Below are positions 7,358 through 40,421 of a stretch of 64,000 bases of DNA, one piece after another. The notes beneath the pieces were generated by a model. The model searched no databases. It was not told the DNA's origin and worked only from the letters and a program-made list of their open reading frames with translations. Each line of letters begins with the position of its first letter. Positions within the stretch are counted from its first letter, which is position 1. The stretch is from NCBI GenBank assembly GCA_965235115.1, contig OZ249437.1, positions 33,480,001 through 33,544,000 on the forward strand. Direction: 5' to 3'. The stretch is from Laetmonice hystrix. Its lineage: Eukaryota. A program made the position numbers and the translations under genes.

Positions 7358-7423
7358 ATGTTGTGTGGATGTGGACGGAAGAAGAAAAAGAAGAAGAAGG
7401 ATGAAGAAGAGGAAAAGAGACCG
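7358..7423 (+). CDS. shot: Candidate alternative first coding exon: MLCGCGRKKKKKKKDEEEEKRP (palmitoylation-type plus polybasic N-terminus) splicing to CH2
   Basis: First ATG after in-frame TAG (7337-7339), G at -3; 22 open codons; donor CCG|gtaatt in phase 0 (same intronic hexamer as the exon 9 donor), matching the phase 0 acceptor at 15763; preceded by a CpG-rich island at about 6700-7350. Confidence 0.65.
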
Positions 7424-10400
7424 GTAATTATTTATTTCACTCCAACAAAAGTTTTATAACAGCGTTTTCTTACTCTTTCCTTTAGGCTCCGATCGTGCCA
7501 GGTTAGACTGTCAGAGAGGGTTTTGTTTGTTTTACCAGCCTGTTTGTATGATGTGGTCATGTAGCCGTCACCGAGATTCATTATGTCACGGAATGTTTTA
7601 GACATGTCTGGGAGGTCGGAGTTGTTATTTTAACAGCCTGCAAGCTGTGCCTCGTAACAACGCCACTGTTTACATAACCAAACTTCACTGACTGTTCTCA
7701 CTGGAGTCTCTCACATCGGATCCGTAAAGTAGGTCTACAAACCCGCCCACTAACTTACCTTAAACCAGATATTGGGTGGGGAGGGGAGCAATCACCTCAG
7801 GTGAAACCATCGTGACATTGGCATTCTCTCAACCTCGTGTTGATTTATGGCCTGGCTGGCCCGCAGCGAACGTTCAGACACTTTGTGTGAGCACCAACCC
7901 CATCTATACCAGACAGAAACAGGGAAACACGGCGAATACCAGCAACATTTACGATCACTGGCACGGCCGTCTAAAAGTTCAGCCTAAATATAGGTTAATG
8001 TTCCGTTCAGAATTTGTGGATGAGGATGGGAAAAAATCCGAAGGTCAATGACTAGGTTTGTTCACACAAAGATACCTGAATTGTTAATTTTTTTCTTGAT
8101 AAAATACCTTCTGTCATTTATTTTGATAGATGTGATGTCAAGATAACACTGCTAAAGTGCATCTAGATGAAATTGGGGTTGTAATGTCACCTGTATGTAT
8201 CTGGATAGTGTGTACATTTGAAGTTTATGTACATACCAGAATATAACAAGTAGAAGCTTGTTCTGTTCATATAGCGATTGTCCCCAGGAAACTTGCCGCA
8301 GACTAAACCCTAAGAACTATCCAAGGAAGGGGAGAAAATCCGATTGTTGAATTTGTACAGTAGTAGCGTGAAAATAGCTCTATGTGGGAGCATGTAGGGC
8401 ATGTACAAGGAGATTTACCACTCTAATGTATGAGTTTAGTGCCCATTCATGGGTGAAAGAAAGACACAGTTAGGTGCCAATGTCTAGCTGATTACTCAAC
8501 TGGCACATTGAATCGAAGAGCATTTCTCTGTTGATTGTTGTCGTCTGGGTACCGAAATATTCTGCAGAAGTACTTTCTATCATAAAAGATTAAAGTTTTG
8601 TTAGATTTTGTTTAGGGGGGGGGGATTCATGATCTCTAGACTGTTTATCCGATCCAGAGTTGGTAAATTTCGTGCGTTGTCATCTTCTGCAGGAATTTTC
8701 TTCTAGCAGTAGAACAAGGTTGCAATGATGTAAAGTTTTGAAGGCCTTGCTATGATTTTGAAGTTCAGCGAACGAGTCGATCACATAGTAACTGTAAGCC
8801 GTGATTAAGATATAACATAGGTAATGCAGACTTGCGTGAAACATATACTGTATATTATGAGATGATTAATGAAGCAGACATTCACTATTAATGGCCATCA
8901 AGATCGGATATCACAGTGGGACGTGCCCGAGGTGGTCTTGAATGAACCGGGGGTGGTGGCCACAGACAGATGATCCTCCTCCACGACCACATGGGATTAT
9001 CCTGGATAAACCCAGCAGGGAATTTATGATTAGACCCCACCATATGGCACTAAGGCATGGCAGGATAAGCCGTCTAACAGAAATAGAATAACGTTCTTCA
9101 AGTTGACCTTGATGCGGGTCGAACCCTTGAGGGGAAGTAGTTATAATTAAACGGGTTATCAAAGAACGTGATATCATATGTCGGCATGTAAGAGACAAGG
9201 TGACTGATATGTCTGCCGGTTCTGGTGGTCAGTATTATTATAAGGCGGCTGGCTATACCTTCCCAGGGTGTTCCCTATGTACCCAGGAATGGTCAGTAGT
9301 TCAGGATGGGCAGTACCGGGTCATGACCTACCCCAAGTGAGCTGGACTGGAGTTTTCAAGTATGGCCAGCTGGGGCTAAAAGTGGGTCAGTGGCTTCACA
9401 CGTGGGTGTCAATCGTTTGGTAATTAAATCAACACAAGTAGGCCCGGCAATTATAATTATCGTCTATATTTAGTGAAGACACCGTCGTCATGTCAATCAC
9501 TCTATTTGTGTAGCTGATTAAATTAGCAGGTTATTGGGGTCTGTTATAAACTTTATATAGGCCTACTGGGTACAAATATGATGGTATCTATAGCCCTCAG
9601 GGTAAGTCGGTGTTTGGATAGCATTAACATGGTATGAAGATAACGGTGGCCGTTACTGTAGTAATAGTGCCGCCGCCGGGAGGCAGTAAACTTGTTAAAG
9701 TCAGTACCAAGTCTATAAATGCTTGGGGAAGGACGCTTGAGAAACTACCCAGCCGTGTTAAAAGGATAATCGTCGATAGACAATTATGTCGTTGATCCTC
9801 TCATTATGAGGAGGATATAGAGATAGTTGAAGGCAGATGGTCCGTTACCCTGCCACTTTGATCAGCTATCTCGTTAGCTTCAGGTGGATTATTCCCCGGA
9901 CAATTCTTATTCTAAGATAAACCTGGGAAGATAAACCTCATATACAGTAAGCCTAGGCAACATGACAACGCTGCCTTGGCAAGGTAATAAAGGCAGATTT
10001 GACCGAAGAAGAAACTGGCAGTGGGAGAATAGATTGGCTAGATGCATACGTCTGAGCCGAACTCGTATAACCCACATCCTAGGCCCGTGTAGAGATAAGT
10101 GGAGGCATGATCACAGGTAAGGTTTATCTTGGGTGATCACTGGAGTGACACCTGAAAGGTAAAATAGATCGTAACCTGATGAAACCATGGGTAGTTCAAG
10201 TCTTTCACACCTGACAATCAGATTCAACAGGTGTGATACTCAGGAGTGAAGGACAACAGGTGTTTGTTTCTGCTGGCCGGTTGCATGAGTCGCAGAGTAA
10301 TTTTACTATAACAAACCCAGCATGGTTTAAAAAGGGCGCGGTGCGGTGTGGAACGGTAGCTAGCCTACGATACAGGTATAGCTCGCAGGCCCATGCACTG

Positions 10401-11292
10401 AGTCATGTGGCACATAGGAGCTTTCATCTACCACATCCTCAACCCAAAGGTAGAGTTCAGTCTGTGGTTCTGAATACTGACGGGTTGAAATCAGCAGAGC
10501 TTTACACAGCGGTGGTAGTGGAGCCGGGAAAATCATTTAAGTGGGATGGGAGACTGATTGGTTAATTTCCAACATTTTAAGATACTGAAACCATAGGAGA
10601 AAGGCGATGCGTATTATGTATTTATTGTCTGTTAAATGTTGATGCATTACCTTTTCATTGAATGTTGTTTTGTGGCCAGGGGTCTGTGTCATATTGAGGT
10701 AACAAATCCTGCGTGAAATATAACCAACCCGGGAGTTTACATTAGATCAGTAATTTAATCAGGAATACAGGTACAATATACATATAAATAAATATTCTTC
10801 CCTAATTACTTTTTACGGCACTCTGGTGTAAACAGTTTGGTTACTGACAGATGGTGCAGCAGGTATGCAAACAAGATTTTCTCCGATTTCTGAAAGTGCG
10901 TAAAACATTATGATAGATGGATTGTTAGGCCATCCCAGTCGCCTACTTATAAATAAGGTAAAAAACCTATATGTTTGTAGTATTGTATTACCTGACTTTA
11001 CGTACAGGGATTGTTGAATTCAACTGAAACCTAGCATGACTGAAAGCTTTTACATCTGACTCTGGTGTCAGGTTTTAACCTACGCTACATGTCAACATCG
11101 TTGTCAATAAAGGCCATACTTTATTGAGTGACATATACATTGTACAGATACGTGTTTGAATCGATCCATTAAGTAATTAAAACAGTAATTGGCCTCTGGG
11201 CGGTGTTTTGTGTCATTGCTCCGGCAGGCCGTTGATGTGAACGAGGCCAACCCAGTAAGGGTCACTGACTCCGCGCCTAATGCGAAGTCATT

Positions 11293-11306
11293 GTCACCAT
11301 GGCAAC
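11293..11306. promoter_or_regulatory. Consensus RFX X-box GTCACCATGGCAAC
   Basis: Matches GTYNCC-AT-RGNAAC; lies in a local GC-rich island. Motif match only. Confidence 0.4.
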
Positions 11307-13309
11307 GTGTCATCGCCGTTCTGGTTTACGGAGGAAATAGATTTCTTCCATGTAAAGTATAAGAACGGGCATTCTTTGAGGGTTCAAGAAAATAAGAGAG
11401 GGTTGTGAACTGTTTGAGGCATTTCGTGCATTATATTAGGATTAGATGCTGAATTGGAAAAGTCTATCAGGAGGAATTCAGGATGTTTTCCTAACCAGTC
11501 AGTACTAGTTTTCTGAAATGTTATGGTAATCTTGCATTTGGAAAATTTTTAAACAATGCATGATATTTCTAAAAGTGAATTTGTCTCCTGCGATACCCAC
11601 TTTTCAAGTTTGGTTGGTGTGTTGGGGGCCACATTCAGCCGACTCTAAACCTCTACTAAACCTTGAAGACAACCCCAGCGGTAGTTCGACCATTGTCCTA
11701 ACAACAAGGCACTATGTACATCACAAAAATGATTTCCCGCCATTGTTTTCCATGATTCACTCCTGGTGCATCCATGTTAAATTACAGGTGTAACCGAGTG
11801 CTTTGATTGCCCCGGGTAAGGTCACAGGAGTCGGCACCATGGTGCAGTAGAATGACCTCCGGTATCAGTCGGGTGCCCTGACCCTGAGAGATGTTTAATG
11901 TCCAGGCCCTGATCTCCCTACGTCATGCCAGGTCCGACTTGTTGAAACTCTCTGTAGACAGAGTGTTCTCTGTGTGCCAGGTAGTAAGCCAGACAGGCAG
12001 TATTCTAACCTGGGGCTTACCTACTGTAGACAAGTTAGAAGTTAAGGCCAGATTGGTAGGCAGTACTTCGCCAATTCCCTGTCATTCACAGTGGTGCGAG
12101 TAAAGACCAGCGGGGAGGTAGCATTAAGTACGGCTGCCAACAACGAAGGTTTTACCTTCGAATAGAGTTTACAAAAAGAGTTATTTTTTCCCATCTGGAC
12201 ATGTTGATCAGGTCTAGTCTTGATTTTAAGCAACAGGATAAACAGCTCTGCACTTAGATTATTGCCAAAAACGAAATTCGCGTGATGTTTTGTATTGTGC
12301 AGAGAAATATCCCCTAAGATAATACGACGTGTGATAGACTTCATATTCAACAAGGTTATTCATGCGTGAAGCATAGTTTTAAAAACATCTATGAACTTCT
12401 GTCTATGGACGTCTGTAGGTATTTAGGATTTTATAGGCGGAGGAGGGAGGGGGTCGAATTTCTATTATTATATATTGCGGGCAGATAGTGTTAAGAGCAG
12501 AGAGCCCGAAGTGATACCAAGAAGAAAAAATTACTTGTGTTAGTGGCCCCAGTAACTGAGGTGCGTGTAGATGTGGTCAGGCGGTGTTTTGGGATGCTCA
12601 GGACTCAGTCGGAATGTAAGGTCATTGTTGGGGTCAGATGACCGTGAGCAGTGCCCGTGGGACGGTTATTGGGCCGTGAAGGTGAAGAGGTTGGCCGTGA
12701 GCCGAGAACTGTCTGACCGACATGATGATTGATGGACGGGTAGAATTTAGGACACCTGAGAATGACTGTGAAGTCCTGAAAGTAGTCCCAGCTGGCTGCT
12801 ACTACTCCTGCTGCTGCTGTGTTTCCTCCAGTAGCTCACCTGGCCAGGCACATACACACGTTATGTTATTTGTTCCTCTAGCTTTTTCAGGAAAGGCATT
12901 TTTATAATCCTTCTAATTCTTCGCCTTCACCTTTGCTTTCTCTTTGGGTTTCTTCTCCGTCATCATGCACCCTTTGCTTTTTCCCCCCGACTGCCATCAG
13001 TGTTGTAAGCCTCCCTGGCTTGATTTCTGACTTGAATTTGTCGTAACCTTGACATTTGCAGCAGCTGTTTCTACCTCAGCTGATGTTGTTCTGTAAGGGC
13101 ATTGGCTGTTCGCCATCCTACCATGTCAACAATTCAATCCATCTTGTTTCTCTTTCTCCTAACTTGCTTTCATCCTCTTCACATTCCCTATTGATGATTG
13201 ATTTCGAACATTCCTTCACCAGTAAGAAGATTTTTGAGAAGTAATATGGAAGCATGATGGAGGTGACCATGACTGTGTGGTGTTTTAATGTTTAATTTTT
13301 AAACTTATA

Positions 13310-13660
13310 ACTTGGATGGATCTTGGCGTGAGTAGGGTTAGAATGTGTGAATGGATTCTGATCGGAGAGGATTTATAGATCATGAGTGGGGAGCTCATGG
13401 CGTGAGTACAGTAATGATGTGTGGATAGATCCTGGGTTGATTAATGTTATAATGCGTGGGTGTATACTGGTACAGTAGGTGGATCATGCTCTGCGTACAG
13501 TTATAATATGTGGATTGATCCAAACCTGAGTGGATTTATAATGAGGAGGTGGAGTCCTGCGTGTTGGGTGGCCCTGACCTTGTGTTAGTATAGTAGGATG
13601 ATGAACGGGTGCCCCATAGCATGAGTACGGATATAATGAATGGGTGGGGTCTTGGCCAAG
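13310..13660. repeat. Old degenerate tandem repeat, unit about 35 bp
   Basis: Recurring ggatc(a/t)tggcgtgagta..gtt(a)taatgtgt-like segments with many substitutions. Confidence 0.45.
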
Positions 13661-15762
13661 TAAATGGCTCGGGACACATAGGGACCTACCCAGAATTAGT
13701 GCCGCTCCTTAACGTCACCTTCTATGAGTGGGAGGAACAGGGGTCAGTTTCACACCGGTCCTGAAACGGCATCCGAACCCCGTAATCTGACCCTTCAGGC
13801 TCCACCAGGAACCCCCTGACGCTACCTACTGGAGGGGGCTCTTCACACAGGAGGAGGTCACATAGAGCAGGAGATGGGACGCTTTTCTAGGTGTAAAAAC
13901 TTTCATGACTTCCACACATGCTGTAGATAAGGAGAGATTTCTCTATAGACAGGCATCATTTGTTAGAAGTCGATTTATAGCCGGTAGAAAGCCTATAGAG
14001 TGGCATGCCAATAAACAATCGAAGTTTCTCCCCTGTAAAGACTGTGTGCCAGAATACTGGATTCTTAACTTCTTAACGAAATCCACGGTCCATTGCTGGT
14101 AAAATATTGGCTGTGGATTTCGTTAAGTAGTTTTGCTGCGGAATTACGACATAATATATTACGTAGAAGCTATGTGAGTGCCTGATGGTGAAAACTCTTA
14201 TTTAAGCCTTGTGCAACCATTACATGTGGCTAGATTGAGTGGTTAGTCACAAATAATCTCCTTATAGATTATAATACAGACCTTACTTATGAAATTCCAG
14301 AGAAGGAAAGTGGTACTGACGATAACATAAGGTGTTTAGTTGGTATGGGCAGTAAGTTAGCTGTAGGTCTGCAGTCTTGGAGCAGTCCTGAAACCTACCT
14401 TTTAGATATCTATAGATGGAGCAGTTGGAAGGAGTGTTTTCAAAGTTTCCTAGAGCAGAGAAGAAGACTATTTACTTGATTAATCTAGTGCGGATGAAAG
14501 GAGATTTTTGCCTGTGTTACGTTTGTTGGAATACATTGTTCAGTCAGTTCAGTCAAAGTTCGAGGTCAGAGTTCCATTTTTTGACGATATAGGATGCTCA
14601 CGTGTGTGAAGTAGCTGTAATTTTATGGGGTGCCGTTATATTTATGATTTACGTTATTTTTATGACATTTACAGTTCATTCCATTGAAAGGCCACTTTCG
14701 TAACACAGAGGAGGCATACATCCCTTTAAGCAGAGCCATTTATGGTACTTTAGACTTAAATAGTTTGAATGTTTTTGAAGCTGCTGTCCTGATGTTGGAC
14801 TGAGGTTTCTGAATATATCAGAAATATGACAAAATAATGGTGGCAAACAAAATAATTGTAGCAAACGTGTTTCAAACAAAGATTGCAATGTCTGGTTGAG
14901 GCATACTTGGAGCAGTGCAGCTCGCATGTTGGCGACAGTTTTGGTTGGGAATTGGTGACTGCTGTCGTGGTTGGCTGAGGAGAGGTCGACAGGGATCGTC
15001 CTCGGCATTGCGTGCATGTCTAAGTGAACACTGACTGTAGGTGTAGGACTTCCCCTGAGGTTATTAATCTCTGCTCATAACGTCAAGTTTTCTCTGTAGT
15101 TGAGGAAGATACTGGTAGTCTGTGCGATACCAACATGGAGTGAAGATGGGCAGAATTGACTAAGTGTCTATGGGAAGGTTGTGTTTGAAACTTTCGGCAT
15201 GGATCGAGTCTCTGACTTGGTTGGAGGCAGATATCCAGCATACACAAGACGAAAGTGGCGAAGAAGCAAGAAAAAGGTAGGAAGGACAAGGACGGCTGGG
15301 TTTACACTAGGTAACAGCCTTTCTCTAGGTAACAACATCGATGACCGTGAACATACGCTAGACGGTTGGGTCAAATTCCATATTTCAGGTTTATATGAGT
15401 TGAGGGTTACCAAGAGCCACAGTTTTAATACCAGTGTTTCATGTTGATGGCCAGGAGGGAGACTTGTGATAGTTCAGGTGTTGTTACTGACCAATATCTT
15501 GCATTATTGATGATCGCAGTAACCTTAAGAATTGGTCTGACTTTTCCTGGAAGGAGAATCAACCCAAGTTATTCAGGAACGTGATTTCCGTTCCATATAT
15601 CGCACTCCCTTGCTCACCCTCATAACAAGGTGGAGATAAAGCCATAACACCATGCCCTGTCATTTTGTGTGTATTCATGCTAGTCCCGTTGAAACAATTA
15701 AAGCAGAGTTGACAGAAATCATCGCCCTCGATCCTAACGATGTTGTTTTGACTGTGTTGCAG

Positions 15763-15929
15763 ATTTCGGATGTTGTGGTGCCGGGGCAAGCTGAAGACTT
15801 GAGCGCCAAGGAAGCGCTGCTGCTATGGGCGCGGCGCACGGTGGAGGGGTACCCGGGCGTACGGATCCGGGATTTCTCCAACAGCTGGCGGGATGGCAAG
15901 GCTTTCCTCTCCATCATACACCGGCATAG
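15763..15929 (+). CDS. shot: Spectraplakin exon 1 in window: N-terminal half of CH2 domain ([56 protein letters not shown])
   Basis: Acceptor tgtgttgcag at 15753-15762, donor gtaagt at 15930; translation carries the CH2 signature EALLLW...F..SWRDG.AF..IIH of plectin/dystonin/MACF1. Phase 0 in, phase 2 out. Confidence 0.97.
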
Positions 15930-16384
15930 GTAAGTCGGTCTTGTGTTCCTCATACTGCAGTAGGTGTTGGTCCTTCATACACTGTCATAGGTAGGTCGGC
16001 CTTCCGTCCCTCATACTGCAGTAGGTGTTGGACCTTTATACACTGACATATAGGTAGGTCGGCCTTCTGTCCCTCATACTGCAGTAGGTGTTGGTCCTTC
16101 ATAAACTGTCATAGGTAGGTCGGTCTTCTGTCCCTCATACAGCAGTAGGTGTTGGTCCTTCATACACTGTCATAGGTAGGTCGGCCTTCGGTCTCTCATA
16201 CTGCAGTAGGTATTGGTCCTCCATACACCGGCATAGGTAGGTCAGTCTTGTGTCCCTCAAACTGCAGTAGGTGTTTGTCCTTCATACACTGTCATAGGCA
16301 GGTCGGCCTTCTGTCCCCCATACTGCAGTAGGTGTCGGTCCTTCACACACTGACATAGGTAGGTTGGCCTTCTGTCCCTCATAC
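15915..16384. repeat. 61-bp minisatellite, about 7.7 copies, starting inside the exon and spanning the donor site; degenerate copies to about 16550
   Basis: Unit catacactgtcataggtaggtcggccttctgtccctcatactgcagtaggtgttggtcctt; first copy is catacaccggcatag|gtaagt. Confidence 0.95.
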
Positions 16385-19971: not shown

Positions 19972-20087
19972 GCCTGATCTGGTCGACTTCCGTACGGTGT
20001 CCACCCAGACAGCCAAGGAGAACCTCGAGATGGCGTTCAGTATTGCCGAGAAGGAGTACCAAGTCACCAGGCTACTTGACCCGGAAG
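19972..20087 (+). CDS. shot: Spectraplakin exon 2: CH2 (PDLVDFRTVSTQTAKENLEMAFSIAEKEYQVTRLLDPE)
   Basis: tttgtacag acceptor, gtaagt donor; NLE.AF..AE....VTRLLDPED CH2 motif; phase 2 in, phase 1 out. Confidence 0.97.
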
Positions 20088-20771: not shown

Positions 20772-20977
20772 CAGTTACATAACAAACCCATGCAGTTACA
20801 TAACACACCCATGTAGTTACTTAACAAACCCATGTAGTTACTTAACAAACCCATGTAGTTACTTAACAAACCCATGTAGTTACATAGCACACCCATATAC
20901 ATGTAGTTACTTAACAAACCCATGTAGTTACTTAACAAACCCATGTAGTTACATAACAACCCCATGTAGTTACATAA
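20772..20977. repeat. 21-bp minisatellite, about 9-10 copies
   Basis: Unit ccatgtagttacttaacaaac; gives the MGLLSNY repeat in shadow ORF 20750..20965. Confidence 0.95.
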
Positions 20978-21723: not shown

Positions 21724-21830
21724 ATGTGGACGTCCACCAGCCAGACGAGAAGTCTCTCATTACGTATATTTCCTCCCTTTACGATGTGTTCCCTGAAGTC
21801 CCCACCATGGAACAATCCGTCCGTGACAAT
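21724..21830 (+). CDS. shot: Spectraplakin exon 3: end of CH2 ([36 protein letters not shown])
   Basis: ttgtttcag acceptor, gtaagc donor; DVD...PDEKS.ITY.SSLYD.FP motif; phase 1 in, phase 0 out. Confidence 0.97.
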
Positions 21831-26174: not shown

Positions 26175-26294
26175 GAGCGACAGCTCAAATGGGAGGAATA
26201 CCGTGAGCTGGCTTCAAGTCTTCTTGTCTGGCTGCGGGAAGCCACCTCGCTCATGCAAGACAGGAATTTCCCCTCAAACCTCATAGAAATGAAG
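26175..26294 (+). CDS. shot: Spectraplakin exon 4: first spectrin repeat (ERQLKWEEYRELASSLLVWLREATSLMQDRNFPSNLIEMK)
   Basis: gtgttgttgcag acceptor, gtacgt donor, 120 nt, phase 0/0; W.EY......LL.W.R......+.R.FP motif of plakins. Confidence 0.95.
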
Positions 26295-27319: not shown

Positions 27320-27418
27320 CGGCAAGTACCGGTAAACCAGTGTGAATGAGATCGGCAAGTACCGGTAAACCAGTGTGAATGAGACTGGCAAGTACCGGTA
27401 AACCAGTGTGAATGAGAC
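27320..27418. repeat. 33-bp tandem repeat, 3 copies
   Basis: (c/t)ggcaagtaccggtaaaccagtgtgaatgaga(t/c) at 27320, 27353 and 27386. Confidence 0.95.
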
Positions 27419-29419: not shown

Positions 29420-29929
29420 GAGATAGACAACAACCACAGAACATACCGAGATAGACAACAATCACAAAACATACCCCGAGAGATACGGCAATCACAGAAC
29501 ATACCGAGATAGACAACAATCACAGAACATACCCCGAGAGATACGGCAATCACAGAACATACCGAGATAGACAACAATCACAGAACATACCGAGATAGAC
29601 AACAATCACAGAACAAACCGAGATAGACAACAATCACAGAACATACCGAGATAGACAACAATCACAGAACATACCGAGATAGACAACAATCACAGAACAT
29701 ACCGAGATAGACAACAATCACAGAACATACCGAGATAGACAACAATCACAGAACATACCGAGATAGACAACAATCACAGAACATACCGAGATAGACAACA
29801 ATCACAGAACATACCGAGATAGACAACAATCACAGAACATACCGAGATAGACAACAATCACAGAACATACCGAGAGATACGACAATCACAGAACATACCG
29901 AGAGATACGACAATAGACATACCGAGAGA
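29420..29929. repeat. 28-bp minisatellite, about 18 copies
   Basis: Unit gagatagacaacaatcacagaacatacc; homogeneous centre with variant units at both ends. Confidence 0.97.
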
Positions 29930-31507: not shown

Positions 31508-31603
31508 ACGGCTTTATCTGAGTTCAACAGGTTTCGAGTGGAGGAGATCCCTCCAAGGCTCAGAGAGCAGCAGAGGCTCGGACAACTTTTTGATGAGCTA
31601 CAG
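31508..31603 (+). CDS. shot: Spectraplakin exon 5 (TALSEFNRFRVEEIPPRLREQQRLGQLFDELQ)
   Basis: tttgcag acceptor, gtgagt donor, 96 nt, phase 0/0; F+.EEIPP+ helix matches the plakin region following exon 4. Confidence 0.92.
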
Positions 31604-31712
31604 GTGAGTAAGCTTTCTCAGAAAAATAACATCCTTTCGACAAACCGGCAGATTTGTCGGTACAAAATGTATGTATAGTAATTGGTTTGTAGGATCTTAC
31701 AGGGTCACATGT

Positions 31713-33030
31713 GGTCGTGATTCATGAACTGGGGGCAAAAAGTGTAACAGGGTCAAAATGGTCAATTTTTCAATATTCATCCTGTGAAATAAACAAATGA
31801 AGGTCTCTTAATTGCACATAGACTGACTCTATTATTCCCATCCGTTAATTAATAAAGTACAATTGAATTACCGTAATCAATAGGATAATGCATTGGGACT
31901 CCAACCTTTTTTATTGATTTTCTCAAAACGGACATGGTTTGACAAAAATAAGCCTAACTTCCCTTTATTTCAACCGAATTTCACCAAACTGGTGGCAAAA
32001 TGCAGACAAGAAAATGTTCTTTCAAGTGAGACCTGATGTTTTGATGTCCCACACCAAAATGACTACAAAAAAGAACTTTGAAAATCAGGTGGGTGAAAAT
32101 CATGAAAAATGCAATGGAAATGATCAGCTTTTATATTTAGAGCCCTCAGGCAATCCGTGACTGTGTAAAGTTGAATAAAAGCCAACAATGAGAAAATAAA
32201 TCTCTTAAGATAATAAATAATTATTAAATAATTGTAATTAGCACCATCTTGCACCTCGGACCTCGCAACAAAGTGTACTGACTTAGTACAAATACAGTGA
32301 AATAATAACCTAATAATACTGGCAACTACCAAGGGTTGTGCTAAGGGGTGAAGCGGGCGATTCTTAAGTCGATTCTTACAATACATAGGTGTATTTTTTT
32401 GCATGGGCCCTGGTGTCCTACGGCACCACAGTCACCTAAAATGGATCCTGGGATCTATTGGCAGTCCCAGCTGTATACCCTTCATGACTATTTATGCATA
32501 AAATCCTCATATATAGGGATCACAATGCAAACTAAACACCCACGTGCCTGTTCCAATTTTCTCATTCCCATGTACACCAACAAGCGCAGCATAACAAGGG
32601 GATTAAAAATCTCACGATCACTAGTTGACAAGATTGTAGAACTGGAAGGCCAATTTGTAAGATCTGTCCACTACTAAAATAGCTTCCTTCTACTGGCCTC
32701 TCTTTGACCCTCTTGGAAGCCTAGAGACACCTATATGCTAATAACAGAACCACACATTGAAGTCTGTATTGAAAATGCACCGCCTCCTCCGACCGCCTCC
32801 TCCGATCCCCCAGGTACTCATTTCATTCACAACCCAAGAACTTGGTTGCATTGAATCAAACTGTGATAAATGTGACATCATTAGAAAGGTGACATCATAA
32901 GCTTTCAGAATATACCTAGTTTGTTGTTGTAGCCCTATTCTTCTGAATAAAAGTTCGATTTGAATGGGACAACTTTGTCAGATGTGTTACAATCCCCCAT
33001 TTTTGATACCCCAGTTCATGAATTGTGACC
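31713..33030. mobile_element. ~1.3-kb non-autonomous TIR DNA transposon with 4-bp TSD (ATGT); superfamily not assigned
   Basis: Left TIR ggtcgtgattcatgaactgggg versus reverse complement of right TIR ggtcacaattcatgaactgggg (19/22); atgt flanks both ends; no transposase ORF seen. Confidence 0.75.
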
Positions 33031-34943
33031 ATGTTCCAAATCTACTGTGGTGTTTACCGTCGGGTTTTGATGTTTTTAATTGTTCAGAATCGTACCTTTT
33101 AGACCTTGATTAAAGTCTTTTACAGTGTTGAAATCCCCCTTTAATACGTTTGTCGTGCCTGAATGCGTACACACAAGGCCTCGTTATAACGGGCTCCTTG
33201 GCCCTTATTTGTAGCCCCCCCCCCCCTCCACGTATTGCCTTTCAGCCCACTGATTCTGCGAGGGACTTGTATGGGGAGGGTGATGAAGAGGTCAAGTCAA
33301 GGATGCGTAATGTCAGTGCAACTGCCAAGGTTTTTTTCCTAACGTCAGAAGACTGATTCATACAAACCTTAGACATCTGTGCCATATTGCCCAGACTTGT
33401 CCACCCACAAAAACCACAGTCATTGACTGTGTCATTCTACAAACACTATGTCCTCGCATCAACCGATTTCATGGTCCATTTCCATGTTTTGGAATAAATT
33501 CTTGGCCTTTGGCTCCTTCGATTCATATTTAAACTTCATGATGTTTTTGTCCAAGTTTCCTTCATCAAATATTGAGCCCTGTTGAATCTGTATATGTCGC
33601 AACTCCTATAATGGTGCTGTTTTTATTTTCTTCCTTTTTAAATTCTGTTTTTGCAAATCTGGCCGAGCCATCAACCCTTAAAAAGAACTAAAACTGCAAA
33701 ACATTTTTAGTCTAAACCTGTAGTCATTTCATAGCTTATACTGTGTCAATAGGCCTCTAAATAAGCTTTGGTACTTGCTGACCTCCTATTACTATTCATA
33801 GTGCTATATCACATCCCATTCTTTGCATACAGTGAGAGGCGATGACACACTGCTTTACTTGGAAGCTTAAAAAAGGCAGTAGAGTTCAAGTGCCTGGTGT
33901 TTCTGCTTGGATTTTTTAATCATGTACCAGAGCTGCAGACATGAGGTGATTCAAGCCTTAGGTCTTCATGATATCCACATGTGTATCCTGAAAGAGACGC
34001 ACACAGTCGCCTTGAGAAGTGGTCGTCGGCAGAGGGCCTGATCGGCTTCAGACCTGTCTTTTTTAGGGGGGGGGGGACCCCCACCAAAAGATCAGTTAAT
34101 CACCCCAAAGTTTTCTGGCTATATGTTTTGGATAGGGTTGTCCCTATTTGATTGAGCTCGTGAACCAGTTATGACTGTAAAAGCTTGGTGCAGTCGATCA
34201 AGATTGTTTTGTCATCATGCTGACATAGCTGTTAACAGTTAGGACCAGATTAGCCGTGGATTTGTAACTTCCGAAAAGTAACCTCTCGTGATATCGGCAT
34301 GGAACATAAGATGATATGCAAGAGGTTCATTAGAAATGCTGATGGCAAAAAATGGGCCGATTTCAAGAAGGTCAACATCGATAAGAAATCTGATTTCAAC
34401 AAACCAATCTCTGTGGCCGTCTCTGTGGCGTCAATGAAGGAAGTACTTTAGGCCCTTTCATAACCTTTAGCCATCTTCAGGAAGAAACTGAAGTATTGTG
34501 ACACAAACAATCCGTATTGTAGGAAACCTGCAAACTGGGACACGATACCCAACCCTTTGTGTGAAATGGCAAGGGTTCCATTCCTGTGGCCTGCTGAGCT
34601 CAGCGCCTTAACGGATCTCTTCGAGGGCACTTTTTTTTATATTGAGTGGGATTAATCTCCAGATAATAACATCTGCCTCGATACCCGAACGTTTCTTACC
34701 TCACTTGGCACACGTTACCAAGTTGATGTCGGCCAATGACATGTTTGCTGTGAGGAATCGTTACGACTCAGAGCATTCTCTGGTGGACCCGATCACACCA
34801 AACCGCCTTGCCTTCTGAGCGCTGATCCAGTGAAGTGGAGAACTGTGTTATGTAACACTTGACCCGATGTCATAGCTGCTCCATGCCTGATTCGGAGACC
34901 GAGCCGTTTTATTGGGCCAGTCTGAGTACGGTATAGAACTTAA

Positions 34944-35018
34944 GCCTGGGTCACACTGCCCGATTTGTTTTCGTCGGCCGATTCCGGCGTCGGCCGACGG
35001 AAATTGTAGAATCGGCAG
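34944..35018. mobile_element. Truncated relative of the 49082 MITE (left end only) with palindromic core
   Basis: ttaa|gcctgggtcacactgcccgattt resembles ttaa|gccagcgtcacacttacccgattt; cgtcggccga...tcggccgacg hairpin. Confidence 0.55.
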
Positions 35019-36491
35019 GAAAGTTTATAAAGAAAAACGTCTAGCTGGCTCGTAATAATACGTGAAGATAGGACCTATTGTATTCTATTATTCCTAAATC
35101 ATGTAAGACTGGTACATCTCATACGATAGAAAACTGCTGAGATACCCACAATATTGACCATGTAGGTCAGCCCTCCACCTTGAAAAGTGTTAAGACAAGG
35201 GACAGGTAGAGTAAATAACCTGACTAGGCCACGTGCTTGTACTGGTTTACCGTTGATTTGTATGCAAACATTTTGGTGGATATAGTGCTGGCCCCGGCTC
35301 TGACAGAATGATAGCCAGCTCAAGTAGGCTTATACACTGAATTCAAATGGGAAACCTGAACGGTTGAGACCACCAGGGCCTTTGTTCTAACCAGGACTTG
35401 GGATTTACGTTCGTCAAGGATGTTTTCAACATGTTCAAAGAGTTGTAGGACGTTCACCCGGTTGGGGACTGGGGAGAGCGCGCGGGTCAGCGCCGTTGTA
35501 CAATTACTCGTACACTGTCCCCGTGTGATTTGACACTTTGGGTTATATGGGACTCCGCCATATAATATATTGAAACGTCCGTTTCGGAGCTCTCCGTCAC
35601 ATGGAAATAACATGTGTTTACCGCTGACATTCGGCAGGAGATATTGCAACATGAAACCTGTGGTTGACTCTCAAGTTTGGATGATTTAATCATTGAACCG
35701 CACGAGGTGCTAGCCGACAAATGTATGCCTAATTTCTATTATCTCCAGGAAAAATCGAAGCAGCCTGCTGTTTACTGTGCATTATACTGGGAATCGACCG
35801 TGAAGTAAGAAGATGGACAATATTTTGAGTAGCAAGGGATGACCACGTCTATCTCCAGTCATTAAGCCAGGCGGGTCAGTCAGTGAGCGGAGAAATGATT
35901 GCGTAATCCAGAACCACAGGGAGCTGCCTTATGTTGTATGTGTGGTGGTCAGTCAGGGTGCCGTCAGGTGATATATAGGACACATATTGAGAACGATCCA
36001 GTACCTTATAGATTTTGTGTGTGTATGTAGGCCGATATTATACTCTGATCATCCATGTAGACTTGGAGCATCAGACCAGCTGTTAGCAGATGATCTGCTG
36101 GACTCGATCTGTGGACTCGCCAGGGTTCAGCACGTGAAACGCCGACACTTCGAAGTGATACTTGACTAATTGATCAAAGTGAAGTCGGTTACAGGTTATA
36201 GATTGAAGACACCGCCCAACCAGGACAGAGAAAAGAGTTCACCTCGCAATCTATTGGTCAGCGATAAGGAGTAGAGGCTGACATGTGAAATTATTTAACA
36301 TGCAGGTGACGGCAGCACTGTGTGTCAAGTCGTCTAGTCATGCAGACGTGGCTTCATGATAACTGACCACTGACTTGTGTCGTCGTCTGGTTTTGTTGAG
36401 AGACAGTCGAGTCGTAATGTAGCGGGTAGGGACGTAATGACAATGATACAAACCTGATCACTAGGATTTACACCCCCTACTGTCACTCACC

Positions 36492-36704
36492 ATGGAGGAT
36501 GGGTCGTGGTGGTGGGGTGGGGAGAACGTGGAGCAGGCAGGGACTGCCACTGGAGAAGTCGAGTACATGGACCTCCAGTACGGCTGTATGGAGGTGTATG
36601 TACTGGAGATGATGGGGCTGGATGTGTTTATGGAGTGGCCGTATGTGGCTGTGCCCTTTGTACTGGTCATCGGTGTACTCGTCGTTCTGGTCCTGTTTCT
36701 GCGG
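36492..36704 (+). CDS. shot: Candidate alternative first coding exon: 71 aa, acidic N-tail plus single transmembrane helix (YVAVPFVLVIGVLVVLVLFL-R), splicing to plakin exon 6
   Basis: Strong Kozak caccATGG after in-frame TAG (36462-36464); 213 nt open; consensus donor CGG|gtaagt in phase 0, matching the phase 0 acceptor at 40291; 20 consecutive uncharged, mostly hydrophobic residues; GC-box-like (accgccc) and inverted CCAAT (ctattgg) motifs 240-280 nt upstream. Confidence 0.7.
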
Positions 36705-37266
36705 GTAAGTTTGTTAGACCTGAGGGCACTGGCGGATCGGGGGGGGGGAGGGACTGGGGCCAACAGATGTACTTGGTTGATCCAAGACGTTGACGTCCAG
36801 AGACAATAAGAATGGTGATTGATAACTGTGAGCAGTGGCGGATCCAGGGGGATAAGGAACCCACCCACCCATTGGCAACCGTTTTTTTTTTTTTTGCCCA
36901 CAGTCGATATAGCACTTTACGAATTGATAATGCCCAAGCAACTTCTTCCCCTAAACCAACCTGGCGAGATGTTATAAAAATGTTCAGATTTGGGTGCATT
37001 ATCATATTTAATATTATAGTTAATCTAAGGAATTGGATATAGAAGCATTAGGTTACATTACCCTGAACCCAGCTTCAACCACATCGCCACTGTAAATAGT
37101 CCGACTCGGGTTAAATGAAATAAAATGTTCCAGTGAAGATGGCCAATACTTGCAACCAGTTACATCTTCCGTCCAGATTAACCAGATTGGAGAAAAGGCT
37201 AAGACAGTAACGATTAAATTAAGCCGCTGGTGACATGTAGTGGACATTATATCACCTTGATATTAA

Positions 37267-37706
37267 AGGCAGGGTAAACACCCACGGCAAATAAGGTTTC
37301 ATAGACCAAATAAAACACCAGCATTTACCTCAGGGCAATAAATGCCACAATTACGTTGTCTGAATGAAGTAATTAACGTGTAACCGCCCGATGTATGACG
37401 CCGCTGGTTCTTACCTTGGCTTCTTGTGTGTTCATCAAAGCCGAATGCTGTACACCGCGGCGTATTGCGTAACATTACGTGCAACTCTGCTCACAGACCT
37501 TGTCTACACGATGTTTGAAATCCCAACGTTTGTAAACGTCCGAGGTGTTGAATACCCAAGCAGAACCAGTTGCGTCACACATCGGGCAGTTACACGTTAA
37601 TTACTCCATTTATACAGCGTAATTGCGGCATTTATTGCCCTGAGGTAAATGCTGGTGTTTCATTTGGTCTATGAAACCTTATTTGCCGTGGGTGTTTACC
37701 CTGCCT
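37267..37706. mobile_element. 440-bp MITE with ~145-bp near-perfect TIRs, TTAA target site and AGG...CCT termini (Kolobok-like)
   Basis: TTAA|aggcagggtaaacacccacggcaaataaggtttcatagacc... mirrored by ...ggtctatgaaaccttatttgccgtgggtgtttaccctgcct|TTAA. Confidence 0.93.
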
Positions 37707-40290
37707 TTAAAGAACGGTAGGCTAAGACTTGAACATATTCGACATATAGGACTTTCAGAAACTGTATTACTATGTTGATTATGAATGTCAAATTTTGGCA
37801 AGGGTATAAGGAAGATCTGTGTGAAGGTGTTGAACCGAACGTTAAATTGACGATTGCACCGGTACTTTTCTTAAAGACCTGCCCAGGATGGGGAACAAAC
37901 ACTTAGTATCAAACTTTGAACAGAACGGATCACTTTCAAAGATAAAGTGAGAGATAAACGGTAACTGTATGAATATCATTCATCTTGACGTGTCAGGAGC
38001 TCCGAGTCTGAGATCAAAGGTATCGCTCAGTGATAAATATAATTAATATTTGGGGGTTTCAGTGCTGTAGATCTCTTGAAGAAAAGGAATGGAAAGTCTC
38101 TGCATATTTTCATTTGGTCTATAGGAGGCGAATTGGACTGGACTTGTTTGGTGACTACAGATTTAATTGTATTGTATTTTTATCTGCGTCGGACTGATGG
38201 ACATCCTAGACATGACATTTCCAACCAGATTTCGAAGAAAGTTAGAAATTCGCCATTGTTGATGTAAAATTTGATAATGCAGCAAACTACATTCCGTACA
38301 ATTTACCGATCAGGTGTAGAGAGGAGCAGAACCTCGTGGTTGGGTAACATGTGACTGTGTATTCACTGATACATGGCCTCCTGGTTGTTACACAGTGTGT
38401 TTACAGCATGTACCAGCGGGTAGCTAAGATTGTCCGCTCCCTGGCCCTGGGACAGCTAGCTACTTCATGATGGGAATGTTAATACAGGACACCGACTGTA
38501 TTATACAGTGGGTGACATGACTCTCACCAGACATCTCATGGGACGACTGCCAAGCCAGTCCAGAGATTCAGAAAAAGAATAATTTTGTTATTGAGTTGGG
38601 ATTTTGGGGGGGATATATTGATAAATTAATGATACTGTCGTATGAACTCGTTTGTTTGTTAATATCTGTCATTCTGTATATTGCTTCACGTGGAACTGAC
38701 TATAGTATAGGTTACGGAGACCAGCATTGGGTGGCCACACACCTACCAGTCTCCGGCGTCGTCCTTTCAAAACTTGATGATCCCAGCATAGATTACCTCA
38801 CATCAAGCTGGCTGGGGGTTCACTAAGTATTCTGAGATCCACAACGAATCAGACCATTGATTAGTAACAATAACCATAAAATATATTATTTAGATTTTTT
38901 TATATATGGAATGAAGCATGAAGGTTTATTATGAAACAACATAAGGGAATGAAGATGAGCAGAGTTAAATATTTCAGTCCGACTCAGTTTGTCCGATCAG
39001 CCGACGGGCCTGGCTGACAGGTACCTGGCTGGGTATTGTGTTAAAGGAGCAATCCGTGGTAGCCGTGTCAGGGTGCCAGAACACCTTGTCACTGACCTAC
39101 AGGCCGACCTGCTCGCAGGCGTACACTGCAACCAGTGGAAAACAACCAAATACTGTCCGTAGTATGCAGGAACGTGACAAACAACGTTTTGTTTTTGTCC
39201 AGAAAAAAAATATATATCCAGGTCAACCATAGAACTTCATACCAAATTCAAACAGATTGTAGGGCCCAACGTAGTTGTGTGAGAGATTTAAACTTCAGGA
39301 ACGAATGAAATAGTGAATAAAATATCGTTTTGTATGCATATTACTTTCGTGGTAGTTGAGGTCATAAAAATGGCTCAGCGTTAAAAATTTCCCTTAGGTG
39401 GTGGTAATTGGATATGGTTTTTATTCCACCATAAAATTCTGGAGAAAAATTTGTTTGATTAGATTAGGTCGACATGATCTCTCGCTCGGAATTAGAATGA
39501 ACACTATGTGTAAAAGTCCGTTTTCTAAGAGAATCCTCTGTTAGGCCCGCAACAAGGATATATCCTTCATGAAAAACAGGTCGAGTGAACCAGACAGTTT
39601 AAAAAGATTTGACCGAAACGATGTCAACAGGTTGACGTTTTCCCAATCCAGTGGAGAAGTACCTTCTTGGCCTTGATAAATACTGACTGGTAGTCTACAC
39701 ATGTCACTCCTGAACAAATACTTGGTAATATTGAGTGGTAGAGAGTGAACTTTATACAACCATGAGAACTTGACAGAGAAAAAATCAGATTCTGATGACG
39801 CCACAAGGTCCAGGTATCGGGTGCCGTCCATGTCTATTATAATCTCTTGTATTCTCTGTGGACTTTGGGACAGAATAGGTCTTCTCTATCACTTGCTTGT
39901 CGTATGAGGCGACCAAGTAATTTTTTGTCTTCTTTATTTTATCTCTTCTATGTCATTTTCCGTGCGTGGGGCATTGAAGACAATACATGTATGTCCACCC
40001 CAAAAGTATTAAACAATGTAGAACCCCCCCCCCCCTTCGGAAGATGCCCTGTAGTTGCTGATGGGACTTTATATAATTCTGTCACATTAATCTAGAATAA
40101 TGATGTAGTTTTCCGTCTCTTCAAGTGGATTATCAGGAACAAGTTGGAGACCCCATGCAGCAGACCTCCTCCAACCACCGTGCCCTGTTCGATGTGACGG
40201 CTACTCGTGGTCAGCCCTACCTATACATGTTGTACACACAGTAGTTAGATTTTGTAGCTCACTAACTAGAAATGAATTTGATTTTTGCAG

Positions 40291-40421
40291 GAGTTGTCGG
40301 CCAACCGGGGTCAGTTTTCGATTGAGGAACAACTCCACATGGATAACATTAGTCGGCAGTGGGACCGTTTGACTCTGGTTCAGCAGGAGAAAGATATGTC
40401 ACTTCAGGCGGAACTCTCACG
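40291..40421 (+). CDS. shot: Spectraplakin exon 6 (ELSANRGQFSIEEQLHMDNISRQWDRLTLVQQEKDMSLQAELS-R)
   Basis: atttttgcag acceptor, gtacgt donor; phase 0 in, phase 2 out, continuing into LERLQRLA. Confidence 0.93.

What the first reader, a model, noticed from the sequence alone, without database searches (positions are those of the whole stretch)
7358..40421. Synthesis: a multi-promoter 'membrane-anchor menu' trading actin binding for direct membrane attachment
Seen: introns upstream of exon 6 are long (>=15.7, 4.0, 1.6, 4.3, 5.2, 8.7 kb) while plakin introns are mostly 0.1-1.9 kb. The two best cryptic exons in the long introns both encode membrane-targeting signals and both end in the correct phase. 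Inference: a graded series of CH1+CH2 (upstream promoter), lipid anchor+CH2, and TM with no ABD, all feeding the same plakin/plectin-repeat body. This parallels the vertebrate a1/a2/a3 system but is arranged differently, and it may be unannotated in lophotrochozoans.
Basis: inference. Interest (0 to 1): 0.75.

Follow-up and report, generated by a model that had tools for sequence, protein, structure and literature searches.

The report
Alternative membrane-anchor first exons, spectraplakin gene
The long 5' introns of this invertebrate's giant cytoskeletal-linker (spectraplakin) gene hide three short protein-coding start exons that are conserved in a related species; two look like membrane anchors, a fatty-acid-attachment motif and a membrane-spanning helix, but no RNA data exist to show they are used.

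Summary
The window carries the 5' half of a spectraplakin gene on the + strand. The introns before "exon 6" measure 4.0, 1.6, 4.3, 5.2 and 8.7 kb. The first one is really 27.4 kb, because the CH1 exons lie upstream of the window. Plakin-domain introns are mostly 0.1-1.9 kb.

Both cryptic exons exist as described:
- 7358-7423: 22 codons starting MLCGCGRKKKKKKK.
- 36492-36704: 71 codons, an acidic N-tail followed by a membrane-spanning (TM) helix.

Both start at an ATG, end at a GT donor in phase 0, and fit the next acceptor.

The new evidence comes from a relative whose introns cannot be aligned with the window's. Both exons recur there in the orthologous introns. In the lipid exon, all 12 nucleotide differences in 19 codons fall on third codon positions. 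The relative's TM exon has 70 codons, the same start context, a shared LEWPY motif, a TM helix and phase 0.

No RNA run exists for this organism, so splicing, promoters and membrane anchoring remain inferred. The architecture matches the known multi-promoter N-termini of Shot, MACF1 and dystonin. I class it as a new variant of a known kind. The scan's own earlier notes on this window describe the two exons singly.

The parts
7358..7423 (+). Alternative first coding exon, the 'lipid lead': MLCGCGRKKKKKKKDEEEEKRP, donor CCG|GTAATT, phase 0. It lies inside the 27.4-kb CH1-CH2 intron, 8.3 kb upstream of exA.
   Evidence: Sequence read. The ortholog in the relative is at L006 4835-4939 (MFCGCGRKKKKKKNDEDEEYKKP..., phase 0, donor GTAATA), 13 kb upstream of its exA; tblastn E=2e-6. 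All 12 nucleotide differences in codons 1-19 fall on third positions, and 9 of them are synonymous. Candidate-pair score 96 against a null maximum of 39. The motif occurs once in the own genome.
15199..15276 (+).
   Evidence: Found by the unbiased candidate-pair scan with score 60 against a null maximum of 39. The relative carries MENSPQGLIGGRYPSYRKERSRRSFRVHKK|GTGAGC, phase 0, 1.1 kb upstream of its exA. Not found within 3.9 kb upstream of exA in a more distant species, L007.
15763..15929 (+). exA: the constitutive exon that starts at the CH1/CH2 linker (ISDVVV...) and begins CH2. It is the acceptor shared by the CH1 route and the two CH2-only leads. Start phase 0.
   Evidence: Pfam CH hit on the genome at C2:33495802-33495930; tblastn 56-62% identity to arthropod spectraplakins; acceptor ttgcag| and donor AG|GTAAGT.
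19972..20087 (+). exB (CH2).
   Evidence: conserved in the relative.
21724..21830 (+). exC (end of CH2).
26175..26294 (+). exD: helix A of the first plakin-domain spectrin repeat.
   Evidence: phmmer hits plectin 2ODV residues 8-45 (E=4e-7) and MACF1 4Z6G residues 241-277.
31508..31603 (+). exE; ends CAG|GTGAGT in phase 0.
36492..36704 (+). Alternative first coding exon, the 'TM lead': 71 codons, Kozak context CACCATGG, a 48-residue acidic N-tail with no Lys or Arg, then a 21-22-residue hydrophobic helix that ends at the donor CGG|GTAAGT in phase 0. It lies 3.6 kb upstream of exF.
   Evidence: Sequence read. It is the only TM-grade candidate among 126. The ortholog in the relative is at L003 11165-11374: 70 codons, phase 0, 3.2 kb upstream of its exF, same CACCATGGAGGA start, LEWPY motif, TM helix, no Lys or Arg in the N-tail. 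BLASTP E=7e-4 and 16/42 identical residues in the ungapped C-terminal part. Pair score 68 against a null maximum of 39. Similarity stops at the donor.
It is the only conserved acceptor downstream of the TM lead.
40842..53740 (+). About 20 short plakin-domain exons, including the SH3-bearing repeat near 45.7 kb, separated by short introns.
   Evidence: tblastn.
53924..64000 (+). Giant plectin-repeat exon; the open frame runs off the window end.
   Evidence: A 3370-codon open frame; Pfam Plectin E=2.6e-219.

Best explanation
The window holds the 5' half of a spectraplakin gene (the shot/MACF1/dystonin/VAB-10 kind). Its long 5' introns carry nested alternative first coding exons, each presumably with its own promoter.

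Route 1: upstream promoter(s) read through four CH1 exons (outside the window) into exA, giving a full CH1+CH2 actin-binding domain.

Route 2: the first exon at 7358-7423 splices to exA. The product is a CH2-only isoform whose first residues (Met-Leu-Cys-Gly-Cys-Gly, then 8 basic residues) form a GAP-43/PSD-95-like dual-cysteine + polybasic motif. This is predicted to be S-palmitoylated and to hold the N-terminus on the inner face of a membrane.

Route 3: the first exon at 15199-15276 also splices to exA, giving a second CH2-only isoform with a basic, non-lipid lead.

Route 4: the first exon at 36492-36704 splices to exF, skipping both CH domains and the first two helices of the first plakin spectrin repeat. 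It supplies an acidic 48-residue tail and one TM helix. That helix would act as a signal anchor (N-terminus out, body in the cytosol) and make the plakin/plectin-repeat giant an integral membrane protein.

Shown: the exon map, the phases, and conservation with a coding signature.
Inferred: the transcription starts, the splicing partners, acylation, membrane insertion and topology.
For: Gene identity:
- CH hit, CH2 and plakin exons, plectin repeats, CH1 exons upstream.

Reality of the lead exons:
- In a relative, constitutive exons are 57-90% identical at the protein level while introns give no blastn match.
- All three leads recur there in the orthologous intron, on the same strand, starting at an ATG with a purine at -3 and ending at a GT in phase 0.
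- An all-against-all comparison of ATG-ORF+donor candidates gave scores of 96, 68 and 60 for the three pairs. The maximum among 933 non-orthologous pairs was 39.
- Lipid lead: all 12 differences are at third codon positions, P about 2e-6 if positions were equally likely.
- TM lead: conserved length (71 vs 70 codons), distance to exF (3.6 vs 3.2 kb), start context, LEWPY motif and hydrophobic helix. Similarity ends at the donor.
- Only one TM-grade candidate exists in 2 x 53.8 kb.
- Both exons are single copy and not transposon-derived.

Fit with prior knowledge:
- Spectraplakins use several promoters to give CH1+CH2, CH2-only and ABD-less N-termini.
- Dystonin leads carry myristoylation/palmitoylation sites and a TM segment (PMC3352950; bioRxiv 10.1101/122010).
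- The Dst isoform-3 promoter lies downstream of the isoform 1 and 2 start sites and of a gene-trap cassette placed within CH1 (PMC7325434).
- GAP-43 needs its N-terminal Cys3 and Cys4 acylation for membrane binding (PMC2994833).
- Basic residues next to cysteines promote S-acylation (PMC4035745).
Against: - There is no transcript evidence at all. The only public runs are three DNA runs of one sample, and the reads lie evenly over exons and introns.
- Conservation rests on one relative. Its second assembly, P0134, is not independent.
- The TM lead is only about 38% identical in its best part. tblastn did not detect it, and neither did phmmer against 1.84 billion representative proteins.
- Its codon-position pattern is only weakly coding-like: 22, 15 and 25 differences at positions 1, 2 and 3.
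- It carries 4 SNPs in 213 nt in one run, 2 of them non-synonymous.
- The lipid lead's donors are weak in both species, GTAATT and GTAATA, scoring 2.4 and 0.6.
- The two species end the lipid exon at different points, 22 vs 35 codons.
- The TM isoform would begin inside a spectrin repeat.
- In the relative there is no basic residue right after the TM helix, so the positive-inside rule does not fix the topology.
- CpG observed/expected shows no island at either exon.
Confidence: 0.6

Rival explanations
1. The exons are real alternative first exons of the spectraplakin, but the leads do not anchor it to membranes. The Cys/polybasic lead might instead act as a nuclear-localisation signal, a microtubule- or acidic-lipid-binding patch, or a metal-binding patch. 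The hydrophobic stretch might be a protein-protein or amphipathic element.
For: Nothing here tests acylation or insertion. The third conserved lead is simply basic, so basic charge may be the common property. The TM claim for dystonin-a2 has itself been disputed (bioRxiv 10.1101/122010). The relative's helix is less hydrophobic, with a 19-residue Kyte-Doolittle mean of 1.97.
Against: M-x-C-G-C-G directly followed by 7-8 Lys/Arg is invariant between the species while the codons drift synonymously. The window's helix scores 3.29 over 19 residues. Both species keep 21-22 uncharged residues after a tail with no Lys or Arg.
Confidence: 0.2
2. The conserved ORFs are translated or functional elements that are not spliced into the spectraplakin. 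They would be nested micro-genes or micropeptide ORFs, or first exons of other intronic transcripts.
For: No junction reads exist. The ORFs read on past the putative donors (105 aa in the window; 101 aa called as P0134 in the relative). Three metagenome contigs carry M[LF]CGCGRKKKKK starts, two of them followed by long unrelated ORFs.
Against: Similarity between the species stops exactly at the GT donors. All three exons end in the phase required by the next conserved acceptor, in both species. tblastn found no other conserved coding block between each lead and exA or exF, and the candidate-pair scan shows only the basic lead between the lipid lead and exA. The positions match the known promoter layout of Shot, DST and MACF1.
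Confidence: 0.12
3. Chance ORFs picked out of about 40 kb of intron by a reader looking for interesting signals.
For: The search space was large and the criteria flexible. Each phase match has a 1-in-3 chance. The + strand is G/T-rich, which favours hydrophobic codons.
Against: Orthologous conservation lies far above the null: 96, 68 and 60 against a maximum of 39. The lipid exon differs only at third positions. Only one TM-grade candidate exists among 126.
Confidence: 0.05

Closest known systems
Dystonin (BPAG1) isoform 3 / MACF1 isoform 3 (type-3 N-terminus)
   Same: The first exon is driven from inside the gene, downstream of the isoform 1 and 2 start sites (PMC7325434), and here it lies between the CH1 and CH2 exons. 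The product keeps only CH2. The short lead carries a lipid-modification motif: a conserved myristoylation motif with potential palmitoylation sites in BPAG1a3 (PMC3352950; 10.1101/122010).
   Different: There is no Gly2 here, so no N-myristoylation. The motif is Cys3/Cys5 plus a run of 8 basic residues. I could not test sequence homology to the vertebrate lead because that sequence was not obtainable with these tools. This gene carries a second, basic CH2-only lead close to exA.
Dystonin isoform 2 (BPAG1a2) N-terminal TM lead
   Same: An alternative first exon supplies an N-terminal hydrophobic segment that is proposed to tie the giant linker to ER or perinuclear membranes (PMC3352950).
   Different: In a2 the TM lead precedes a complete CH1+CH2 domain. 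Here the TM exon lies downstream of all CH exons and joins the plakin domain, so the product has no actin-binding domain. No sequence similarity to any database protein was found.
Drosophila Shot A/B/C/D N-termini
   Same: Four promoters give CH1+CH2 (A, B), CH2-only (C) or no ABD (D) (10.1101/122010). The gene here has the same nested layout.
   Different: No function or targeting signal has been reported for the Shot leads (same source). Here two of the three internal leads carry recognisable membrane-targeting features.
GAP-43 and PSD-95 N-terminal dual-cysteine palmitoylation motifs
   Same: Cysteines within the first five residues next to basic residues. In GAP-43, Cys3 and Cys4 are acylated and required for membrane binding (PMC2994833). 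The Cys3/Cys5 spacing equals that of PSD-95; this point is from my own knowledge and was not checked here.
   Different: These are unrelated proteins and the resemblance is of motif only. Acylation was not tested.
BPAG1e / ABD-less plakin isoforms
   Same: An internal first exon joins the plakin domain and omits the actin-binding domain.
   Different: The BPAG1e lead has no TM segment. Here the junction falls inside the first spectrin repeat, after exD and exE.

Membership tests
Spectraplakin gene (shot/MACF1/DST/VAB-10) | N-terminal calponin-type ABD made of CH1 + CH2 | tested here: met
   CH2 exons in the window. CH1 exons at G000:C2 33437209-33437280, 33466496-33466576, 33467402-33467482 and 33468228-33468320.
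Spectraplakin gene (shot/MACF1/DST/VAB-10) | Plakin domain of spectrin repeats with an embedded SH3 | tested here: met
   About 20 exons between 40.3 and 53.7 kb align to the plakin domains of arthropod and nematode spectraplakins, including the SH3 region at 45732-45827. exD matches plectin 2ODV and MACF1 4Z6G.
Spectraplakin gene (shot/MACF1/DST/VAB-10) | Plectin-repeat region | tested here: met
   Pfam Plectin E=2.6e-219 on the exon that starts near 53.9 kb.
Spectraplakin gene (shot/MACF1/DST/VAB-10) | Spectrin-repeat rod, EF hands and GAR domain at the C-terminus | not tested
   These lie beyond the window. Relatives show a further ORF of more than 6600 codons right after the plectin exon, but I did not analyse it.
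Type-3 / C-type (CH2-only) N-terminal isoform | Alternative first exon located between the CH1 and CH2 exons, in frame with the exon that opens CH2 | tested here: met
   7358-7423 and 15199-15276 lie in the 27.4-kb CH1-CH2 intron. Both end in phase 0 and exA starts in phase 0, in both species.
Type-3 / C-type (CH2-only) N-terminal isoform | Transcript that starts at the internal exon and is spliced to CH2 | not testable with these tools
   No RNA run exists for this organism. Database ORFs that contain exA are all genomic.
N-myristoylation lead (as annotated for BPAG1a3) | Gly at position 2 | tested here: not met
   Residue 2 is Leu in the window and Phe in the relative.
N-terminal dual-Cys S-palmitoylation motif (GAP-43/PSD-95-like) | Two cysteines within the first about 5 residues, flanked by basic or hydrophobic residues | tested here: met
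   Cys3, Cys5, then Arg and 6-7 Lys; invariant in the two species.
N-terminal dual-Cys S-palmitoylation motif (GAP-43/PSD-95-like) | Cysteines actually acylated and needed for membrane binding | not testable with these tools
   Needs biochemistry.
Dystonin-a2-type TM lead | N-terminal hydrophobic segment of TM length | tested here: met
   19-residue Kyte-Doolittle mean of 3.29 (window) and 1.97 (relative); 21-22 uncharged residues.
Dystonin-a2-type TM lead | TM lead followed by the complete ABD | tested here: not met
   The TM exon lies 14.7 kb downstream of the last CH2 exon and can only join exF or later exons.

The most novel reading that the evidence does not exclude
Membrane-anchoring leads would be an ancient feature of spectraplakins rather than a vertebrate one. 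Under this reading, the Cys/polybasic lead + CH2-only isoform is the invertebrate counterpart, perhaps the homologue, of dystonin/MACF1 type 3. The same M[LF]CGCGRKKKKK start seen in three unrelated metagenome contigs would then mark that exon in other animals. In addition, the TM lead would create a class not described before: an integral-membrane cytolinker with no actin-binding domain, whose cytosolic body is the plakin domain plus a plectin-repeat array of more than 3300 residues. Such a protein would tie intermediate-filament-like or other networks directly to a membrane.
Probability: 0.25. Interest if true: 0.7.

Novelty: new variant of a known kind. Interest (0 to 1): 0.5.

Why it matters
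Spectraplakins link actin, microtubules, intermediate filaments and membranes, and their N-terminal isoforms decide where they act. Membrane-targeting leads have so far been described only for vertebrate dystonin, and the fly leads have no known function.

Conserved palmitoylation-type and TM leads in an invertebrate would have three consequences:
- They would show that swapping actin binding for direct membrane attachment is a wider and possibly older strategy.
- They would give simple, testable peptides (22 and 71 residues) for localisation experiments.
- They would flag exons that gene predictors are likely to miss, because the exons are short, sit deep in long introns and lack RNA support.

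The candidate-pair scan across orthologous introns is also a cheap way to find such exons where no RNA data exist.

Tried and rejected
RNA evidence
- The look-up of sequencing runs returned only three runs of one sample and none on record as RNA.
- Read laying over 34700-40600 showed even DNA depth and no splice joints, so it says nothing about expression.

Database homology
- phmmer of the TM lead against 1.84 billion representatives gave 2 weak internal hits, judged spurious.
- A profile of the two TM leads found only the relative's own ORF from a second assembly.
- The ESM Atlas gave nothing above 0.82.
- Pfam found nothing on the ORFs around either exon.
- A search with exA for short transcript-derived fragments returned only genomic ORFs of the ...FQ|ISD type.

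More species
- L007 holds only 3.9 kb upstream of exA and has none of the leads.

Promoter signal
- CpG observed/expected and GC profiles show no island at 7.3 kb or 36.5 kb.

Changed reading
- After tblastn found no TM ortholog, I first took the TM exon to be unconserved. The feature-based scan of the relative's intron reversed that.

Vertebrate comparison
- Jefferson et al. 2006 is not held in the library, so I could not test sequence homology of the lipid lead to BPAG1a3.

Metagenome contigs
- The three contigs with the same N-terminal motif are too short to link to a spectraplakin gene, so I do not count them as support.

Full report
**What is in the window.** The window is G000:C2:33480001-33544000, + strand. 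A 3370-codon open frame runs from 53.9 kb off the window end and is packed with plectin repeats (Pfam Plectin, E=2.6e-219). A database search with it returned spectraplakin, plectin and VAB-10-like proteins. The closest named ones are arthropod, nematode and mollusc entries at 22-28% identity.

tblastn with those proteins mapped CH2 exons at 15.8-21.8 kb, the start of the plakin domain at 26.2-31.6 kb, and about 20 short plakin exons from 40.3 to 53.7 kb. Reading the splice sites gives:
- exA 15763-15929
- exB 19972-20087
- exC 21724-21830
- exD 26175-26294
- exE 31508-31603
- exF 40291-40421

Plakin-domain introns are about 0.09-1.9 kb, with one of about 3.5 kb.

exA begins ISDVVV, the CH1/CH2 linker. 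The CH1 exons lie upstream of the window, at window coordinates -42.8 kb, -13.5 kb, -12.6 kb and -11.7 kb. The last ends ...LHFQ|GTAAGT in phase 0. The intron in front of exA is therefore 27.4 kb, and another 29-kb intron splits CH1.

**The two cryptic exons.** The scan's own notes on this window give their places.
- 7358-7423 reads ATG, then Leu-Cys-Gly-Cys-Gly-Arg, seven Lys, DEEEEKRP, then GTAATT. That is 22 codons ending in phase 0, with a stop 7 codons upstream of the ATG.
- 36492-36704 starts in a perfect Kozak context (CACCATGG). It encodes 48 acidic residues with no Lys or Arg, then a 21-22-residue hydrophobic run. It ends ...LFLR|GTAAGT in phase 0, 71 codons in all.

Both stretches are single copy in the genome, and the lipid motif pattern occurs once in 627 Mb.

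As a chance check, I listed every ATG-initiated ORF of at least 15 codons that ends at a plausible donor, in any phase, on both strands of the first 53.8 kb. Of 126 such candidates, the TM exon is the only one with a 19-residue Kyte-Doolittle mean of at least 2.5; its value is 3.29.

**No RNA.** The only public runs that hold this DNA are three runs of one sample, none on record as RNA. Laid on 34700-40600, their contigs cover exons and introns evenly with no splice joints. They are DNA and cannot speak to expression. Searches for transcript-derived protein fragments containing exA gave only genomic ORFs. Everything below is therefore comparative.

**Comparative test.** P0002 is 57% identical over the plectin exon and comes from a 1.6-Mb ENA contig. 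Walking upstream in six look-ups gave 79 kb of the orthologous locus (L001-L006). The pieces merged without conflict. Constitutive exons are 57-90% identical at the protein level, and intron lengths are similar. The introns themselves give no blastn match, so neutral sequence between the two species is saturated.

1. *Lipid lead.* tblastn found one hit in the 17.8 kb upstream of the relative's exA: MFCGCGRKKKKKKNDEDEEYKKP... at L006 4835, E=2e-6. It starts at an ATG in a GCCGCCAACATG context. It runs 35 codons to ACG|GTAATA, again in phase 0. Over the 19 ungapped codons there are 12 nucleotide differences, and all 12 are at third positions. Nine are synonymous and three are conservative changes. 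If codon positions were hit equally, that pattern has a probability of about 2e-6. This is the signature of a translated sequence under purifying selection.

2. *TM lead.* tblastn found nothing in the relative's exE-exF intron, and phmmer against 1.84 billion representative proteins found nothing credible. At that point I took the exon for unconserved. I then scanned the relative's intron by features alone: ATG, open frame, donor, hydrophobicity. The top candidate of 47 was L003 11165-11374. It has 70 codons, ends in phase 0, and lies 3.2 kb upstream of exF, against 71 codons and 3.6 kb in the window. The two share:
   - the start CACCATGGAGGA;
   - a LEWPY motif just before the helix;
   - a tail with 10-11 acidic residues and no Lys or Arg;
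   - a TM-length hydrophobic run that ends at the donor.

   BLASTP for the single comparison gives E=7e-4. In the ungapped C-terminal part, 16 of 42 residues are identical. Similarity stops at the GT. The read-through tails differ between the species, and even between the relative's two assemblies. The relative's exF acceptor is also in phase 0.

3. *Unbiased scan.* I compared all phase-correct ATG-ORF+donor candidates of each window intron with those of every intron of the relative. There were 447 orthologous-intron pairs and 933 non-orthologous pairs, the latter serving as a null. The null maximum was 39. Three orthologous pairs stood far above it:
   - the lipid lead, 96;
   - the TM lead, 68;

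   The third pair is window 15199-15276 (MDRVSDLVGGRYPAYTRRKWRRSKKK|GTAGGA) against the relative's MENSPQGLIGGRYPSYRKERSRRSFRVHKK|GTGAGC. Both are in phase 0, lying 0.5 and 1.1 kb upstream of exA. This is a second CH2-only lead. It is basic, with no lipid or TM signal. It was not found within 3.9 kb of exA in a more distant species (L007).

**Limits of the comparative evidence.**
- It rests on one relative.
- The TM lead evolves fast, and its codon-position pattern (22, 15 and 25 differences) is only weakly coding-like.
- One DNA run shows 4 SNPs within the TM exon, 2 synonymous and 2 conservative.
- The lipid lead's donors are weak in both species.
- The CpG observed/expected ratio shows no promoter-like island.

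**How it most likely works.** The positions dictate the products. A first exon in the CH1-CH2 intron can only feed exA, so the lipid and basic leads give CH2-only proteins. A first exon in the exE-exF intron can only feed exF or later exons. The TM lead therefore gives a protein without either CH domain and without helices A and B of the first plakin spectrin repeat. For that repeat, exD matches plectin 2ODV residues 8-45, while exF gave only non-significant hits to alpha-actinin spectrin repeats (E=0.08 and above).

The lipid lead has no Gly2, so it is not a myristoylation signal. Cys3 and Cys5 next to eight basic residues match the N-terminal dual-cysteine palmitoylation type:
- GAP-43 is acylated on Cys3 and Cys4 and becomes cytosolic when both are mutated (PMC2994833).
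- Basic residues beside cysteines promote S-acylation (PMC4035745).
- PSD-95 uses Cys3 and Cys5 (my own knowledge, not checked here).

The TM lead has a short, strongly acidic tail with no Lys or Arg and a helix directly before the giant cytosolic body. It is best read as a signal anchor with the N-terminus outside and the body in the cytosol. This topology is an inference, because the relative has no basic residue right after the helix.

**Comparison with what is known.** Multi-promoter N-termini are textbook for spectraplakins:
- Shot A/B (CH1+CH2), C (CH2 only) and D (none).
- DST/MACF1 types 1 and 2 (CH1+CH2) and type 3 (CH2 only).
- Dystonin leads with a TM segment (a2) or a myristoylation/palmitoylation motif (a3).

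These points come from PMC3352950, bioRxiv 10.1101/122010 and PMC7325434. The same review states that no function is known for the fly leads.

The general design here is therefore known. What is new:
- A palmitoylation-type lead on a CH2-only isoform in an invertebrate.
- A TM lead placed after the ABD exons rather than before them.
- A second, basic CH2-only lead.

I could not test whether the lipid lead is homologous to the vertebrate type-3 lead, because the source paper is not held. A literature search found nothing on spectraplakin isoforms in lophotrochozoans.

**A loose end.** A degenerate DNA pattern for M-x-CGCG-R-KKKKK hit three metagenome contigs, where well under one chance hit is expected. 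One contig (L017) reads MFCGCGRKKKKKKKKDRDLTP|GTAACT: 21 codons, phase 0, the same build as the window's exon. Two others continue as long unrelated ORFs. The contigs are too short to tie to a spectraplakin gene. The own genome has the motif only once. I do not count these contigs as support, but they suggest the motif is a recurrent N-terminal module.

**Verdict.**
- Probability that each is a genuine coding exon: lipid lead about 0.85, TM lead about 0.7, basic lead about 0.7.
- Probability that the first two anchor the protein to membranes: about 0.5-0.6 each.
- Transcription starts and splice junctions are untested.
- Class: a new variant of a known kind. Interest is moderate.

Noticed in passing
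window 15199-15276 (+); relative L006 16676-16765: A third conserved ATG-initiated, phase-0 first exon encoding a basic lead (LVGGRYPAY...RRSKKK), 487 nt upstream of the CH2-opening exon.
   Followed up: yes
window 37261-37851: A very high-copy repeat about 550 nt downstream of the TM lead. Summed contig depth is 80,000-325,000 against about 30-70 elsewhere, with many loose ends at 37261 and 37711. A second, milder repeat lies at 34897-35093 (depth about 660-1760).
   Followed up: no
L016 519-812, L017 778-840, L018 4569-5144 (metagenome contigs, oriented): Three contigs start an ORF with M[LF]CGCGRKKKKK. L017 has the same short-exon build, ending ...TP|GTAACT in phase 0. L016 and L018 run on for 98 and 192 codons of unrelated, low-complexity sequence. 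No link to a spectraplakin gene could be made.
   Followed up: partly
window 36567-36584: Four SNPs within 18 nt of the TM lead in run X1 only: M26L, D27E and two synonymous. They indicate a divergent haplotype over this exon.
   Followed up: partly
G000:C2:33437209-33468320 (upstream of the window): The CH1 domain is split by a 29-kb intron. The first CH1 exon (DERDAVQKKTFTKWVNKHL) lies 42.8 kb before the window and the other three lie 11.7-13.5 kb before it. Further alternative first exons may lie there. I had no relative sequence to test this.
   Followed up: partly
window 15930-40290 vs relative (L003-L006): The lengths of the 5' introns are similar in the two species (4.0, 1.6, 4.3, 5.2 and 8.7 kb against about 5.4, 1.8, 4.4, 6.0 and 7.4 kb), although their sequences no longer align.
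   Followed up: no
window 53891-63997: Pfam reports a sub-threshold-per-domain OCRE match (E=9e-9 for the whole protein) inside the plectin-repeat exon, and the precomputed Pfam lists of relatives show it too. It is probably a repeat-composition effect.
   Followed up: no
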